This document shows, in pieces, positions 27,950 through 63,557 of a stretch of 64,000 bases of DNA. Below the pieces are notes generated by a model that worked only from the letters and a program-made list of their open reading frames with translations, searched no databases and was not told the DNA's origin. A program made the position numbers and the translations under genes. How positions within the stretch are numbered: the stretch's first letter is position 1; each line of letters opens with the position of its first letter. Source of the DNA: Octopus sinensis. Lineage: Eukaryota. Location of the stretch: the NCBI RefSeq assembly GCF_006345805.1, contig NC_043025.1, forward strand, positions 1,798,001-1,862,000. The letters run 5' to 3'.

Positions 27950-28133
27950 CAATGAAATCATTCTTGTTACATAAGTGTCCGACACAACAACCAGTACAAG
28001 CCGTGCTATTCGTCCGTTTATTGCATGTAATGTTATTGTTTCTCATAGCTTCAACACATTTTCTGTATGTGCTGCAGGACCTTTCAGTCTTCAGTTTAGC
28101 ACCGTTCACTGATATTGCGAATCGGCATACAGG
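27950..28133 (-). CDS. LU cassette unit 1 (most 3' in the gene), exon B (184 bp, phase 0 to 1)
   Basis: Acceptor tatctattattacag| and donor G|gtaagt. Encodes PVCRFAISVNGAKLKTERSCSTYRKCVEAMRNNNITCNKRTNSTACTGCCVGHLCNKNDFI. Confidence 0.88.
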
Positions 28134-29555
28134 CTGTAATAATAGATATAAAAATTATACACTACAACCAAAATATTTATTAGTACGATTACTGCTCATT
28201 ACATCAAAATATTTCATATGAAAATACGATATATTAGTATAAAATTTGGAGAGAAAACAAGCAAGGTCTTGTTAACTTAATGAGGGACATTCTGAAAACG
28301 GAAAATATCAGAAATGGAGAAGAATATTTAAAGAAAAGAATCCATCACGAAAACGCAATTAATAATCGCAAACACCTAACAATAATAAAAGCAATGAAAA
28401 TGTAGACATTGAAGTTAGAAATAAGATTAGCATTGCCTTAGTTTAGAATTGAAACTCGTTTCTTCTAATCACGGAAAAGTTTTAGAAAGAAAATTGGATC
28501 TCCCAAACTGAGTGAGGATGTCATGAAGAAATAACCAATGATAGTATCGGTAGGCTGGCGTCTTCAAAAGAGCCAATGTAGTCGGTGATTACAAATGAAT
28601 GAATCATTAAATACACTAACTCAGCTTCACAAAAACTGAGATCAGAACAGACAATAAAACAGGAAACAGATGTAAGCCATGCTCTTATGTCACCCTCTAT
28701 TCTCCTATATTCCCGTAGATCAATTAATGTGAAGCATTGATCTGTGACATTACCGGTGTCTTTTATTGTTTCTCTTGTGTTTCTTTCACCAATGTACAAC
28801 TGTGTATTCAGAGATATGCCTGACAATCTTAATTTGTGTTTTAGCTGCGTTTAATCGTATAGCTTTTACCTTTCTCTGAAACAATATGACCCCCACCTAT
28901 TATGTTCTGGAGAGCTTATTGTACTACTTGATGTGAGGGAAGATTTAATCTGTTTCGAATAGTTCATAACATCGTATATCAAACAACCTCTTTTGCTATG
29001 GCCACCAGACGAAAGAAAACTGTCATTTGCTTCTTAACTTATTCAATCCGCTCCCTGTAATGTTTGCGAGCTGGTGGGGCCAGGGCCGACATTCAGTTAC
29101 CCCTCTAAGGTTAGTGACCCGAGGTCATTCGAAAAGGAACCTTGATTCCAAGTTGAATTGTGGCCACATAATTCATGCATCCTACTCTAAGAACAGCCAT
29201 GTTTTGTCGGAGAAATGTTACTCTAAGTTCGTGTGTTCGTTTCTTGAATAGGGATTCCTGGACTGGGTAGAACGTCGTGTCCTTGAACAAGGCACTTCAT
29301 TCCACTTTGTTCCAGTCTAATCGAGGGAAATGTGTCCCAACCTAGTGATGTTCATCTATTTCTCTCTTCAATCGTCACATCCTTCTTGTCCCATTGAGTC
29401 ATGAATAAGAAGACCGATAGGGTGTGTGTATGTCTACGCAGGCACATAAAACAAACTAGCGAAAGCATAGTACAATCTATGTGGACTTAATGGCTTTCGA
29501 GTGACGGCTGTGGATATATTTTAACGGAAGGGAAGAAAGTAATATTCCAGTTTAC

Positions 29556-29647
29556 CTCTGCTTCTGGACAGCTTCTCATATTTGTATCATTACAGATAAT
29601 TCCTGAACATGTTTGACACTGTAAATTCCGTTGATACAACGAGTAGT
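29556..29647 (-). CDS. LU cassette unit 1, exon A (92 bp, phase 1 to 0)
   Basis: Acceptor acttgtattctgtag| and donor GAG|gtaaac. Encodes YSLYQRNLQCQTCSGIICNDTNMRSCPEAE. Confidence 0.86.
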
Positions 29648-30394
29648 CTACAGAATACAAGTAAATATCTGTAGTTATGAACCAAATAATGCAATGCATA
29701 GCAATAACAAGAAATATTTTCTTTATGGTGTAAAAAAAAATGTATACGTGTTAGTATTGAAATCAATACATGTTAGACATATAAAGCAAATTATTAACAA
29801 AGACTATAAACCTATTTTTATGTTCATTTGGAAATGTTTCAATAAAGTCACAAATTCAATTGAGAGAAGCATGAAAGCCACTTGTTGTCCTTTTAGTATT
29901 CTGATGTAACAAACACGTGAAAATCGTTGAACAAGTCAAATAAAAGGATGAAATTTGTAAGTTGCAACCATTGATGCAGTGGAAACTCCCTAATGAAACC
30001 TGAGAATCTCATTTAAGTTATGTTGCAATGTCATATAGAATGTGAAGAAGGCCATAAAATGTGAAGTGAGCAAAACAATATTTGGATAAACAATAAAAAA
30101 TATGATCACTAATATTGTGATTTTTCCAATATACACATATTTATGTATGTATGTAATTATGTATGTATGTATGTATGTATGTATGTATGTATGTATGCAT
30201 GTATGCATGTATTATGTATGTATGTCATTATTTACTGTTATTTCAAGATTTCTTGGCAATAGAGAAAGAGAGAATTTCTATCCTACATCTACGGCTCCTA
30301 CATTGGAATTTCAGCAACATCAGTGTTACCATTTTGGTAAACGTCATGAATTATCATGAATCCAGGTATCTCTTTTCCAATATTTGGATGGCTT

Positions 30395-30595
30395 CCAAGG
30401 CGGCAAGCTGGCAGAAACTTTAGCCGGGTGCAATGCTTAGCAGTATTTCGTCTGTCTTTACGTTCTGAGTTCAAATTCCGCCAAGGTCGACTTTGACTTT
30501 CATCCTTTTGGACTACCAGTAGCGTACTGGGGTCGATTTAATCGACTGGCCCCATTCCCCAAAATTTCGGTCCTTGTGCCTAGATTAGGAAAGAA
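30395..30595 (+). mobile_element. tRNA-derived SINE
   Basis: ggcggcaagctggcagaaac...gttctgagttcaaattccgcc (B-box-like)...gactttcatcc...tactggggtcgatttaatcgact. Paralogues at about 35290, 42720, 51760 and 61480. Confidence 0.75.
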
Positions 30596-30927
30596 TATTT
30601 AGATGGCTTCCAGTCTGCCATATCAGCTTTTTCTGTGCTACAACTTTATATTTATGCTCTCCAACGCCTTTGACTGTTTACCAAAACATTAAATTTCCCT
30701 TAATATAATGGGACATAAAATCGTTATATTTAATAACGTATATATCCATCCATCTACCATCTTCAACGCTCATTATTCCTGAGAGGGTCATGAGGACATC
30801 TGGTACCTCAGGTACCTCCTGCATAGGGTCCTATCAGAGGCAACTGCCAATACACTTACTGATTGAATTCTCAACCATGACCAAATGAGGCTATGGATAT
30901 TTTCTAGCCATCTGTTTTTGGTCTACC

Positions 30928-31718
30928 CTACATGTTTGAAAGAGAATTCCTATCCCTCAGTTAGGTTAATGCATATACCACAGTCAGGTCTTCTGCAAAT
31001 TTTTCCTGCCGGCTTCAGTGTGGTTTCGAATATACTTGAGCTTATGTTAAGAGACATTTAATAGATTTTGGTTGTCTTTTGCCCTTTATGATGGTGTACG
31101 TTTGGAGGATAAACTTCATTCTGTAATCCCTTTTTCGTAGGTGAATGTTCTGCAGGATTGTGTCGAAGGCTTCATTGTTAAGGGGGTTGTATGTGGAGAT
31201 GGATGATAGGATATTGGCTGTAAATCCTTCTTTAACTTGGGATGTCTGAGTTCGTGGATATTGAGTTGTAGGGCACATTGAAAGCCTATATCGATTAGTG
31301 ATTGTGGGTAGTTCCTGGTAAGGAGTGTATCCTTTAGTTCATGTAGCCGTGTGTCCTTGGTGTTTGTATTAGAGACTATAGTACAAATCCCTTTTGCTAG
31401 GTTGAAGGGGATATTCATTCTAGTGTGTCTGGTTTGGCATGAATTAAACAGTAGATATGGCTTCGAGTTCGTAGGCTTATCGTATGTATCTGTTTGTATT
31501 TTGATGATGAAATTCGTAAAGAGGATGTCGAGGAATTGAAGTTGGTGATGGCTATATACCATCGTAAATTGAATGTTTATATCAAGTCCATTTATAAGAG
31601 CTTGAACTCCTTTAAGTCTTTCTATACTTTCATGCCAAAGAATGATAGAAGTTGTCTTAGAAGACAAAGAAGCTATTCTTGAAGAGGATATTTAGCCCTT
31701 CTCTTATGAATTCTTTTT
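30928..31718 (-). mobile_element. PLE RT-thumb fragment carried in tandem unit 2
   Basis: ORF 31116-31667 is homologous to 25876-26427 and is truncated at the duplication junction ggtctacc|ctacatgtttgaaagag. Confidence 0.88.
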
Positions 31719-62131: not shown

Positions 62132-62203
62132 ATTTCAACTATGCTGCGAAGGAATAAGAAAGCGCCATCTTCATATTTTTCTATTAGGTTGTTTTGCAAA
62201 TAT
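62132..62203 (-). CDS. 72-bp leucine-rich-repeat exon (phase 2 to 2)
   Basis: Acceptor atttgtctctttttcag| and donor |gtaaga. Encodes YLQNNLIEKYEDGAFLFLRSIVE(I), a 24-residue extracellular-type LRR. Confidence 0.9.
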
Positions 62204-62559
62204 CTGAAAAAGAGACAAATATTACACACTTTAAAATAAGTAAAAATAAATAAATCTGTTTACTCCTGTTTAGTACTAAATTGCGTTTTAGTCAACACTA
62301 ACAGGGTAAATGCTGATATTACACACTACAATTGTTTGTTTCTCTTCATAGTTCTGTGGGAAGTGTTGTTTGAACAAGAATAAGTTCCTTCAATCTAATT
62401 TAATTATCCTAAGAGAAAATCTGATAACAAAACAGCAACAGATGGAAGGGAATAAAATACAAAAATAACAAAATAACAAGGAGACTTTCTTATGTGCACA
62501 ATATGGGTTTTAGTTAACATTCTCATCTATGGTAGAAATATCATTCTCCATATAGGCAT

Positions 62560-62960
62560 GGTTCTGTGGCAAGAAAATTACTTCTCACATCCATGGATTC
62601 TTTAGTCCAACTGTGTGGCACCTTGGACAAATAACATTTACTATAACCTTGGGTCAACTAAGCGTTGTGAGTAAATTTGCTGCAGGAAACTGTGTGGATT
62701 CCCTTCGTGTGTATATATATATATATATATATATATATATATATATATATGCGTGTGTTTGTCTTTGTGTTTATCCCCACCAACGCTTGATGACCAATAT
62801 TGGTTTGTTTACGTCCCCCGTAACATAGTGGTTCCGCAAAAGTTACCCGACTGATTAAGTGCCAGGTTTTAAAAATTCAGTACTAAGGACGATGTGTTCG
62901 AGGAAACGCTTGGAGGTAGTACTCCAGCATGGCCGCATTGTGATAACTGAAACAAGGAAT
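62560..62960 (+). mobile_element. Probable SINE of a second family, split by a TA array
   Basis: gtggcaccttggac...ccttgggtcaac...ggaaactgtgtgga...(TA)n...gtttacgtcccccgtaac...gtactccagcatggcc; recognised by pattern only. Confidence 0.5.
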
Positions 62961-63149
62961 AGTAAAAGTATATACTCCAGTAGCAGTGTAATGATAAAAA
63001 TGGTTTTCAAAACAATAAACTATTAATTATTGCAATAACATTGACCATCTTCAGACCAGTGCATAACTTTCAGAATCCTATTCAAAGTACACAAAACAAT
63101 GCTCACCTTTTGGTAGAAGATATATACTGGGTACCTATAAATTGACTAT

Positions 63150-63390
63150 AAAAGAAGAACAAGAACAAGAAGAAGGAAAAGAAGACGAAACAACAAAGAG
63201 AAGACGAAGGAAGAAGAAGAAGAAGAACAAGAAGAAGAGGAAAAGAAAGAAGACTAAGAAGAAAAAGGAGAAGAAGAAATAAGAAGAAGAAGAAGAAGAA
63301 GAAGAAGAAGAAGAAGAAGAAGGAGGAGGAGGAGGAGGAGGAGGAGATGTAGAAGAACAAGTAAAACAAGAAGAACAAGAATAAGAAGAT
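63150..63390. repeat. (GAA)/(GGA) purine array; a second array at 63665-63735
   Basis: Directly visible; the two arrays flank the 63486-63557 exon. Confidence 0.95.
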
Positions 63391-63485
63391 AGTGCACTCT
63401 GAAAGTTTATACGTTTCTGAGAGAAAATATATCAGTATCAAAGGAAACATTCAGAAAATAGTATTAAGAAACTGAACGAACTAAC

Positions 63486-63557
63486 AAGTAGTTTAAATTC
63501 GAAAGCCTCGTGAAGGTCCCTTCTTTGATGGTTGAAATTTTGTTGTTCCGCAGATCT
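63486..63557 (-). CDS. 72-bp leucine-rich-repeat exon (phase 2 to 2)
   Basis: Acceptor ctctttctttactgctatag| and donor |gttagt. Encodes DLRNNKISTIKEGTFTRLSNLNY(L), a canonical LxxLxLxxNxIxxIxxxxF repeat when joined to the next exon. Confidence 0.9.

What the first reader, a model, noticed from the sequence alone, without database searches (positions are those of the whole stretch)
27950..63557. Hidden LRR + tandem Ly6/uPAR (three-finger) protein gene with an unusual domain architecture
Seen: eleven minus-strand exons with canonical GT-AG sites and matching phases (2-2, 2-2, 2-1, then [1-0, 0-1] x4) splice into one stop-free frame encoding LRR, LRR, LRRCT and four CCxxxxCN-terminated Cys-rich domains. 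Established: 72-bp phase-2 exons are typical of extracellular LRR genes, and CCxxxxCN is the LU/three-finger hallmark. Inference: this is an extracellular receptor or recognition protein fusing an LRR solenoid to a LU array. I know of no described family with this architecture, but I could not run a domain search. The ORF track misses it because the exons are short and buried in TE-rich introns.
Basis: partly seen in the sequence, partly recalled or inferred. Interest (0 to 1): 0.9.

Follow-up and report, generated by a model that had tools for sequence, protein, structure and literature searches.

The report
Octopus LRR plus three-finger receptor gene
The eleven exons are real and do encode a leucine-rich-repeat region followed by four three-finger (Ly6/uPAR-type) domains, but this is the already annotated Octopus sinensis gene LOC115225969, a member of a published octopus-specific adhesion-GPCR expansion, so it is not a hidden gene of an unknown family.

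Summary
All 11 minus-strand exons have AG/GT sites and the stated phases. They splice into a stop-free 468 aa that is an exact substring (residues 213-680) of RefSeq XP_036370679.1, "uncharacterized protein LOC115225969" of Octopus sinensis (window = C29:1798001-1862000).

The gene is larger than the finding. A signal-peptide/LRRNT exon and four more LRR exons lie upstream of the window, and one more domain exon lies at 21910-21825.

The Cys-rich modules are true LU/three-finger domains. A family profile hits human LYPD1/Lynx2 at E=8.6e-5, and all 12 Cys align. Two AlphaFold models (pLDDT 68 and 74) both have Lynx2 as best PDB match (TM 0.63-0.70), and nearly all other matches are three-finger folds.

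Full-length relatives in Octopus and Argonauta read LRR-LRRCT-LU-...-GPS-7tm_2. Two of them are members of "group 3", the octopus-specific adhesion GPCRs of Ritschard 2019. LU-bearing GPCRs in molluscs were reported in 2026.

What may be new is modest. The four LU modules are a very recent tandem duplication of a 4.3-7.2 kb unit, and their differences concentrate as amino-acid changes in the finger-1 exon.

Assembly gaps leave open whether this copy has its own GAIN/7TM part.

The parts
63486..63557 (-). 72-nt phase 2-2 LRR exon (DLRNNKISTIKEGTFTRLSNLNYL)
   Evidence: AG/GT sites. LRR_8 hit. Present in XP_036370679.1. The exon and its flanking intron form a repeated unit.
62132..62203 (-). 72-nt phase 2-2 LRR exon (YLQNNLIEKYEDGAFLFLRSIVEI), the last LRR
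53252..53409 (-). 158-nt phase 2-1 exon encoding the C-terminal LRR cap (CxC...C...C). O. vulgaris models use an in-frame alternative acceptor about 51 nt upstream (about 53460).
   Evidence: Alignments to solved LRR proteins run into the cap motif. Pfam LRRCT was not hit. Alternative acceptor.
46562..46653 (-). LU module 1, exon A (92 nt, phase 1-0; finger 1)
44407..44590 (-). LU module 1, exon B (184 nt, phase 0-1; fingers 2-3 and CCxxxxCN)
39338..39429 (-). LU module 2, exon A
37184..37367 (-). LU module 2, exon B
34443..34534 (-). LU module 3, exon A (identical to module 2 exon A)
32289..32472 (-). LU module 3, exon B
29556..29647 (-). LU module 4, exon A
27950..28133 (-). LU module 4, exon B
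27800..46950 (-). Tandem genomic duplication, four units with spacings 7223/4895/4339-4887 bp. Each unit carries exon A, a ~2-kb intron, exon B, microsatellites and TE fragments. Non-coding identity is 94-100%.
21825..21910 (-). Next coding exon (GWTKSFVFRLIFKKFNEYNKIPAENISRA), the start of the ~100-aa domain that follows LU in all relatives. The family-typical donor is GTGAGT at 21824. RefSeq uses GTAGAT at 21820.
20890..20954 (-). Terminal coding piece of the RefSeq model (..KVHTMNITYIFRDIISDSDSK, stop). It is weakly supported: no relative has it, and it lies about 650 bp from an assembly gap.
20141..20240 (.). Run of 100 N (scaffold gap) directly downstream of the last family-type exon

Best explanation
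The finding is the ectodomain-coding part of Octopus sinensis LOC115225969. Its product reads: signal peptide, LRRNT, seven LRRs, a C-terminal cap, four LU (Ly6/uPAR, three-finger) domains, then the start of a further ~100-aa domain.

The gene belongs to an octopod-restricted, heavily amplified family. Complete members continue with a HormR-like Cys domain, GAIN/GPS and a secretin-type 7TM, so they are adhesion GPCRs.

Likely mechanism (inferred): the LRR solenoid and the LU fingers form the ligand- or partner-binding head of the receptor. In full-length members, binding or pulling on this head acts through the GPS-cleaved GAIN domain to expose the tethered agonist and activate the 7TM, as in other adhesion GPCRs.

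Shown here: the two-exon LU module has symmetric phase (1-1). It was amplified to four copies by recent unequal crossing-over between ~4.9-kb repeats full of TE fragments and microsatellites. The copies have diverged almost only by amino-acid changes in the finger-1 exon, which is also the most variable part of the domain across the family. This suggests finger 1 is a specificity determinant.

Not resolved: whether this copy is joined to its own GAIN/7TM part or is made as a secreted LRR-LUx4 protein.
For: Exons and frame.

Identity with RefSeq XP_036370679.1.

Upstream SP/LRRNT and LRR exons, and the downstream exon.

Family architecture: 41 Octopus relatives. GPS plus 7tm_2 sit behind the LRR-LU block in P0030, P0038, P0048, P0049, P0050 and P0064. 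P0050 is an uninterrupted 3.5-kb ORF on a 4.2-kb contig assembled from one sequencing run, so it is probably a transcript, and the whole architecture is then one mRNA.

LU identity:
- The A2 profile hits LYPD1 at E=8.6e-5. All 10 PDB hits are LU or three-finger proteins, and 12 of 12 Cys align (weaker with A1).
- AF2 models have pLDDT 67.7 and 74.3.
- The Foldseek top hit for both models is 6zss Lynx2 (TM 0.63-0.70).
- SSF57302 is recorded at the same position of a relative in the supplement of PMC6408891.

Link to the published group 3: A0A0L8FLR8 and A0A0L8GYR2 share 90% clusters with P0048 and P0049.

Duplication and divergence. Exon A differs by 7.6-14%, against 0.7-1% in the adjacent 300 nt. 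For modules 1 and 2 there are 10 nonsynonymous and 0 synonymous differences (Fisher p=4e-6 against the flank). Family-wide, entropy peaks at the finger-1 tip.

The haplotig C6381 repeats the array with the same spacings.
Against: - Pfam's UPAR_LY6 model does not hit the module.
- Foldseek E-values are weak (at best 0.014), and four of the five models in the first AF2 run failed.
- No RNA data could be consulted, so inclusion of all four modules in one mRNA rests on the RefSeq model alone.
- The annotated protein stops after the first exon of the next domain.
- No HormR or GAIN-A exons were found in the 165 kb downstream.
- The GAIN-C/GPS/7TM exons at C29:1654398-1644465 are only 59-88% identical to the O. 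vulgaris models used as queries and lie behind a second gap. They may belong to another gene.
- The excess of changes in exon A could come from gene conversion from paralogues and not from selection.
- No ligand or function has been tested for any family member.
Confidence: 0.8

Rival explanations
1. The locus encodes a stand-alone secreted LRR-LUx4 protein, as the RefSeq model says. It would be a soluble derivative, such as a decoy or ligand-like protein, of the adhesion-GPCR family, with no membrane anchor.
For: XP_036370679.1 ends 22 residues after the exon at 21910-21821, with no hydrophobic tail. Several relatives are also annotated without a 7TM (P0002, P0004, P0005, P0018). No mid-gene exons were found within 165 kb.
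Against: The terminal exon uses a poor donor (GTAGAT) where a GTGAGT donor used by all relatives lies 4 nt upstream. It cuts a conserved domain after its first exon and sits about 650 bp from a 100-N gap. GAIN-C/GPS/7TM exons lie on the same strand right behind the next gap. The closest O. vulgaris model (P0003) continues through GPS into TM1.
Confidence: 0.3
2. These are two separate genes: an LRR gene, and a multi-LU gene that starts at the first exon A.
For: The LRRCT exon and the first exon A are 6.6 kb apart. RefSeq splits the inverted paralogue into an LRR-only model (P0042) and an LU-first model (P0004). No reads were available here.
Against: The LRRCT exon ends in phase 1 and exon A starts in phase 1. 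Exon A has no start codon or signal peptide of its own. More than 30 independent models in three Octopus species, and an uninterrupted ORF on a contig assembled from sequencing reads (P0050), all join the cap directly to the LU domain.
Confidence: 0.04
3. The four-fold LU array is an assembly artefact (over-expansion of one or two units) or a decaying pseudogene array.
For: Modules 2 and 3 have identical A exons and identical 300- and 600-nt flanks. The region is repeat-rich and near a scaffold gap.
Against: Modules 2 and 3 still differ at 25 of 1970 intron positions and 2 exon-B positions. Modules 1 and 4 are clearly distinct. The separate contig C6381 carries at least 3 modules with the same 7224 and 4895 bp spacings before it ends. 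The inverted paralogue at C29:2.087-2.102 Mb has 3 modules. All 8 exons are open with intact splice sites.
Confidence: 0.07
4. The Cys-rich module is not an LU domain but another small disulfide-rich fold that only shares the CCxxxxCN ending.
For: No Pfam UPAR_LY6, Toxin_TOLIP or Activin_recp hit. The models are of moderate confidence and contain a long helix (residues 54-68) that classical toxins lack.
Against: The profile E-value to LYPD1 is 8.6e-5 over the whole domain, with all 12 Cys in register. Every other PDB hit is also LU or three-finger. Two independent models give the same top structural match. SUPERFAMILY SSF57302 hit a relative.
Confidence: 0.05

Closest known systems
Octopus-specific adhesion GPCR expansion, 'group 3' of Ritschard et al. 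2019 (PMC6408891)
   Same: It shares the LRR head, the GPS and the adhesion-type 7TM, and it is restricted to octopuses with clustered genes. Two group-3 members (A0A0L8FLR8 with its Death domain, and A0A0L8GYR2) carry this exact LU subtype.
   Different: The paper's text mentions only LRR, GPS, 7TM and Death domains. The LU domain appears only as an SSF57302 line in a supplementary table. The window gene has four LU modules, whereas the relatives read here have one or two. Its own 7TM part is not demonstrated.
LU-domain GPCR-like proteins of starfish (LyAr2), molluscs and arthropods (PMC11595613, PMC13719153)
   Same: An LU domain sits in the extracellular N-terminal region of a 7TM receptor. 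The starfish LU is closest to human Lynx2, as is this one. The domain legend of Fig. 2 in the 2026 paper lists LRR, LU, GPS and 7TM GPCR among the domains drawn.
   Different: Octopus is not named in the main text of either paper. Tandem LU arrays on an LRR head are not described in the text I could read. The figures were not available.
Human LYPD1 / Lynx2 (PDB 6zss)
   Same: It is the best sequence-profile match and the best structural match. It has 12 cysteines in the same register and the C-terminal CCxxxLCN.
   Different: Lynx2 is a single GPI-anchored LU domain. Identity is about 20%. Here the domain is an internal module of a large multidomain protein.
Vertebrate ADGRA2/ADGRA3 (GPR124/GPR125) (architecture from my own knowledge)
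   Same: LRRs with a C-terminal cap, then a small beta-rich domain, then HormR, GAIN and 7TM. One O. bimaculoides relative carrying this LU subtype is named 'adhesion GPCR A3' by NCBI.
   Different: The ADGRA proteins have an Ig domain where the octopus family has LU plus an unassigned ~100-aa domain. Orthology was not tested.
Multi-LU proteins uPAR, C4.4A/LYPD3, TEX101
   Same: Two to three LU domains in tandem. uPAR and TEX101 are among the Foldseek matches.
   Different: Those are GPI-anchored proteins made of LU domains only. Their LU domains are old and divergent from each other, not 89-100% identical recent duplicates. They have no LRRs.
TGF-beta/activin receptor ectodomains
   Same: An LU fold used as the ligand-binding head of a signalling transmembrane receptor. 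They appear among the profile and Foldseek hits.
   Different: They are single-pass Ser/Thr kinases, not 7TM receptors, and the similarity is weaker than to Lynx2.

Membership tests
LU / Ly6-uPAR three-finger domain | Conserved cysteine framework with N-terminal LxCxxC and C-terminal CCxxxxCN | tested here: met
   All four modules have 12 Cys, NLQCQTC at the start and CCVGHLCN at the end. Nine Cys are invariant and three nearly invariant across 23 diverse relatives.
LU / Ly6-uPAR three-finger domain | Significant sequence similarity to established LU proteins | tested here: met
   The A2 profile against PDB sequences hits LYPD1 at E=8.6e-5 over the full domain. All 10 listed hits are LU or three-finger proteins. 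With the narrower profile A1 the hit was only E=0.15.
LU / Ly6-uPAR three-finger domain | Match to the curated Pfam models (UPAR_LY6, Toxin_TOLIP, Activin_recp) | tested here: not met
   No such hit was listed with max_evalue set to 1 for the window protein or 0.1 for six relatives.
LU / Ly6-uPAR three-finger domain | Three-finger beta fold | tested here: met
The AF2 models have pLDDT 67.7 and 74.3. The Foldseek top hit is 6zss for both (TM 0.63/0.66 and 0.65/0.70). Confidence is moderate and E-values are weak.
LU / Ly6-uPAR three-finger domain | Canonical disulfide connectivity | not testable with these tools
   Only inferred from the 12/12 Cys register with LYPD1.
Extracellular LRR protein with N- and C-terminal caps | Tandem 24-residue LRRs (LxxLxLxxN) | tested here: met
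   LRR_8 at E=2.4e-14 on the window part and 1.6e-41 on the full model. Strong hits to IGFALS, LRRTM, LRRC15 and LGR4 structures.
Extracellular LRR protein with N- and C-terminal caps | LRRNT and LRRCT cysteine caps | tested here: inconclusive
   LRRNT scores E=6e-4, below the Pfam cut-off. The LRRCT Pfam model was not hit. However, the CxC...C...C motif is present, and alignments to capped LRR structures extend over CGCHLPAFVKYI.
Adhesion GPCR (class B2) | GAIN/GPS autoproteolysis motif followed by a secretin-type 7TM in the same protein | tested here: inconclusive
   Met in relatives P0030, P0038, P0048, P0049, P0050 and P0064. Absent from this gene's RefSeq model. GPS and 7TM exons lie on the same strand 165 kb downstream, beyond two 100-N gaps.
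Ritschard 2019 'group 3' octopus-specific adhesion GPCRs | Membership of the clade | not tested
   Relatives P0048 and P0049 share 90% clusters with the group-3 entries A0A0L8FLR8 and A0A0L8GYR2. The window gene is tied to them by the shared LU subtype and by the shared cap and LU region. No tree was built.
GPI-anchored Ly6 proteins / uPAR-type multi-LU proteins | C-terminal GPI-attachment signal directly after the LU domain or domains | tested here: not met
   The last LU exon ends with a GT donor in phase 1 and continues into another domain. The annotated C-terminus ...RDIISDSDSK has no hydrophobic tail (read by eye).

The most novel reading that the evidence does not exclude
The tandem LU modules may be a diversity-generating cassette system. 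Each is a phase-symmetric two-exon unit that differs almost only at the finger-1 tip. Such units can be gained, lost or skipped without breaking the frame, so copy-number variation or alternative splicing would give one adhesion-receptor gene several recognition heads. This would be loosely comparable to the variable exons of clustered protocadherins. Published data place expression of the related O. bimaculoides receptors in suckers, skin and the axial nerve cord.
Probability: 0.1. Interest if true: 0.7.

Novelty: new member of a known kind. Interest (0 to 1): 0.3.

Why it matters
The result gives a name (LU/three-finger, Lynx2-like) to a conserved domain that Pfam leaves blank in a large octopus-specific receptor family. 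That family has been linked to suckers, skin and the arm nerve cord. The result also points to finger 1 as the likely specificity determinant, because that is where both the recent duplicates and the whole family vary most. This makes the family easier to study: express the LRR-LU heads and look for binding partners. As a gene discovery it adds little, because the gene, the family and the LU-on-GPCR idea are all already on record.

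Tried and rejected
- Pfam scans of the module and of six relatives gave no LU-type hit. The weak PML_CC, Fimbrial_CS1 and SSB hits are noise amplified by the four-fold repeat.
- A word-index search from the most divergent member (P0038) reached no new species.
- Exact look-ups of P0001 and P0043 in the contig collection found nothing, so I obtained no transcript contigs for this gene itself.
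- I guessed that the ~100-aa domain after LU is SEA-like. A profile search against PDB sequences gave only chance-level hits (GCN2, ITPR2), so I leave it unassigned.
- I searched 170 kb downstream for the missing HormR and GAIN-A exons and found none. I found only GAIN-C/GPS/7TM exons behind a second gap and one stray TM5-7 exon.
- A first script using mafft timed out and was redone with a pairwise aligner.
- The supplements of PMC13719153 are not held, so I could not check whether Octopus sequences were in that survey.

Full report
**Origin.** The window is G000:C29:1798001-1862000 of a 2.72-Gb, 13,516-contig genome. Protein hits on a contig of the same length (17,062,404 bp) name the organism as Octopus sinensis.

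**Observation.** I extracted the eleven proposed exons from the minus strand. Each has an AG acceptor and a GT donor. One frame of the 1406-nt join is free of stops, and the other two have many. The 468-aa product is identical to residues 213-680 of RefSeq XP_036370679.1, "uncharacterized protein LOC115225969 [Octopus sinensis]", 731 aa. The gene is already annotated with all four Cys-rich modules in one model, so it is not hidden.

**Full extent of the gene.**
- Upstream of the window (window-equivalent coordinates) lie four more 72-nt LRR exons at about 67660, 66925, 66133 and 64312. The signal-peptide/LRRNT exon lies at 71352-71140.
- The LRR exons share near-identical flanking intron sequence, so they are tandem duplicates. 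This unit recurs more than 180 times in the genome.
- Downstream of the last LU exon, the next family-type exon is 21910-21825 (GWTKSFVFRLIFKKFNEYNKIPAENISRA).
- The RefSeq model then uses a poor donor (GTAGAT at 21820) although the GTGAGT donor that fits all relatives is 4 nt upstream. It ends in a 22-residue tail at 20954-20890, about 650 bp from a 100-N gap at 20141-20240.
- I fetched 170 kb further downstream. There are no exons for the rest of that domain, the HormR-like domain or the first half of GAIN.
- Directly behind a second 100-N gap (C29:1655647-1655746), on the same strand, lie exons for the end of GAIN, the GPS and TM1-7 (C29:1654398-1644465).
- It therefore remains open whether this copy is a complete receptor broken by the assembly or a truncated secreted derivative.

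**Family.** A search with the cap-plus-LU region found 41 Octopus proteins (O. sinensis, O. vulgaris, O. bimaculoides). They are named "adhesion G-protein coupled receptor G6-like", "slit-like" or "uncharacterized".
- In all those I read, the cap runs straight into one LU-like module (two in a few). This is followed by a ~100-aa domain starting GWT.., a Cys-rich HormR-like stretch (my reading, not tested), and, in the long ones, Pfam GPS and 7tm_2.
- An exhaustive profile search of 1.84 billion representative proteins found only 26 clusters with this LU subtype. Those whose source names an organism are from Octopus species, apart from Argonauta hians (E=2.7e-8) and one scallop protein (E=9e-6).
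- One hit, P0050, is an uninterrupted 3.5-kb ORF on a 4.2-kb contig assembled from a single sequencing run. It is probably a transcript, which would mean the LRR-cap-LU-GPS-7TM architecture exists as one mRNA.
- In the window's genome there are at least 78 copies of LU exon B, nearly all with the same exon boundaries, and more than 110 GAIN/GPS-region exon matches. They cluster on C29, C27, C8, C25 and others.

**Literature.**
- Ritschard et al. 2019 (PMC6408891) described an octopus-specific, co-localised, positively selected adhesion-GPCR expansion ("group 3"). It has LRRs in 5 of 22 members and a Death domain in one, and is expressed in axial nerve cord, suckers and skin.
- Their supplementary table lists A0A0L8FLR8 (the Death-domain member) and A0A0L8GYR2. 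These two share 90% clusters with P0048 and P0049, both of which carry the LU subtype.
- The same table records SUPERFAMILY SSF57302 at residues 136-215 of A0A0L8GYR2, where my profile places the LU domain. By my own knowledge SSF57302 is the snake toxin-like superfamily.
- LU domains on GPCR-like proteins were reported in starfish, where that LU is closest to human Lynx2 (PMC11595613). They were reported in molluscs and arthropods in 2026 (PMC13719153).

**Is the module an LU domain?** Pfam says nothing. Other evidence supports it.
- A profile of 16 family sequences gave only sub-threshold PDB hits, but all were LU-type (LYPD1, ACVR1).
- A broader 23-sequence profile gave LYPD1/Lynx2 at E=8.6e-5 over the whole domain, with all 12 cysteines in register. 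Nine further hits were all LU or three-finger proteins.
- AlphaFold2 on the two alignments gave pLDDT 67.7 (only one of five models folded) and 74.3 (pTM 0.68, all five between 57 and 74).
- Foldseek against the PDB put Lynx2 (6zss) first both times (TM 0.63/0.66 and 0.65/0.70). E-values were weak, as expected for a 90-residue domain.
- I accept the LU assignment with moderate to high confidence.

**LRR part.** The LRR region is unambiguous. The C-terminal cap is supported by its CxC...C...C motif and by alignments to capped LRR structures, but not by the Pfam LRRCT model.

**The tandem array.** The four LU modules lie in direct repeats spaced 7223, 4895 and 4339-4887 bp apart, 94-100% identical including introns.

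Divergence between modules, by segment:

| Segment | Pairwise divergence |
|---|---|
| 300 nt upstream of exon A | 0-1% |
| A-B intron | 1.3-5.9% |
| Exon B | 1.1-2.2% |
| Exon A | 7.6-14% (modules 2 and 3 identical) |

- The exon A differences are almost all nonsynonymous. Modules 1 and 2 differ at 10 nonsynonymous and 0 synonymous sites. Fisher p is 4e-6 against the 300-nt flank and 4e-5 against all flanking non-coding sequence.
- The changes sit between the third and fourth cysteines, at the finger-1 tip. This is also the most variable segment across 34 family sequences (1.39 bits, against 0.42-0.94 elsewhere).
- The array is unlikely to be an assembly artefact. Modules 2 and 3 still differ at 25 intron positions. 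The 44,231-bp contig C6381 carries at least three modules at the same spacings before it ends; it is the source of XP_029654389.2 and is 98% identical to the window over a 1-kb test stretch. An inverted paralogue at C29:2.087-2.102 Mb has three modules.
- Selection for diversity and gene conversion from paralogues are both possible causes of the exon-A excess. I could not separate them.

**Verdict.**
- The claims that the gene is hidden and that the family is undescribed do not hold.
- The locus is best filed as a new member of a known kind: an octopod LRR-LU adhesion-GPCR family gene.
- Its particular feature is a very recent four-fold LU array diversified at finger 1.
- Its 3' end is unresolved because of assembly gaps.

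Noticed in passing
window 20141-20240; also C29:1655647-1655746 (outside the window): Two runs of exactly 100 N (scaffold gaps) bracket a 162-kb stretch that holds only one stray family exon. The first follows the last family-type exon of this gene. The second precedes GAIN-C/GPS/7TM exons on the same strand.
   Followed up: partly
window 9548-12548 (+): A GC-rich (about 52%) LINE-type retrotransposon with endonuclease (Exo_endo_phos_2) and reverse transcriptase (RVT_1, E=4e-22) ORFs. Similar RT-like ORFs lie at 3267-5406 (-).
   Followed up: partly
window 48478-48888 and 49799-50209 (-): Two RVT_1-bearing TE fragments 1321 bp apart lie in the intron between the cap exon and LU module 1. A third copy at about 40970-41221 accounts for the extra ~2.3 kb between modules 1 and 2.
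   Followed up: partly
window 18001-20100 (+): A strongly skewed stretch (GC skew -0.62) that translates to Ser/Pro/Leu-rich low-complexity ORFs. It has no Pfam hit and lies directly next to the N gap.
   Followed up: no
window 63390-64000 and about 180 other places in G000: The 72-nt LRR exon plus about 300 nt of flanking intron is a repeated unit. It is found at 71-88% identity across many contigs, often in tandem at about 400-bp spacing. This points to large arrays of single-LRR exons in the genome.
   Followed up: partly
C29:2066375-2106470 (outside the window): An inverted paralogue of the whole gene lies about 205 kb away. Its LRR region is 93% identical, and it has three LU modules at 2087014, 2094581 and 2101602 and the next-domain exon at 2106309. 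RefSeq seems to split it into two models (P0042 and P0004).
   Followed up: partly
window about 53460 (-): O. vulgaris models use an acceptor 51 nt upstream of 53409, which adds 17 in-frame residues (NFSVDLKRIQSS.YYYS.). The same stretch is open in the window, so an alternative 3' splice site is possible, although it breaks the LRR consensus.
   Followed up: no
relatives P0004, P0018, P0019, P0023, P0024, P0038, P0039: Family members with and without a 7TM end in the same short tail (...TAETNF or ...TAETDL). It looks like a PDZ-binding motif and suggests that some 7TM-less models are splice forms that skip to the last exon.
   Followed up: no
C29:1673789-1674175 (-) (outside the window): An isolated copy of the last 7TM exon (TM5-7, 67% identical to P0023) with no other family exons nearby.
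   Followed up: no
window 12561-13282, 31657-32250, 36552-37142, 39772-40489, 46996-47900: Long TA/CA-type microsatellites and (TATG/CATA)n-like arrays recur in every LU repeat unit. They are plausible substrates for the unequal crossing-over that made the array.
   Followed up: no
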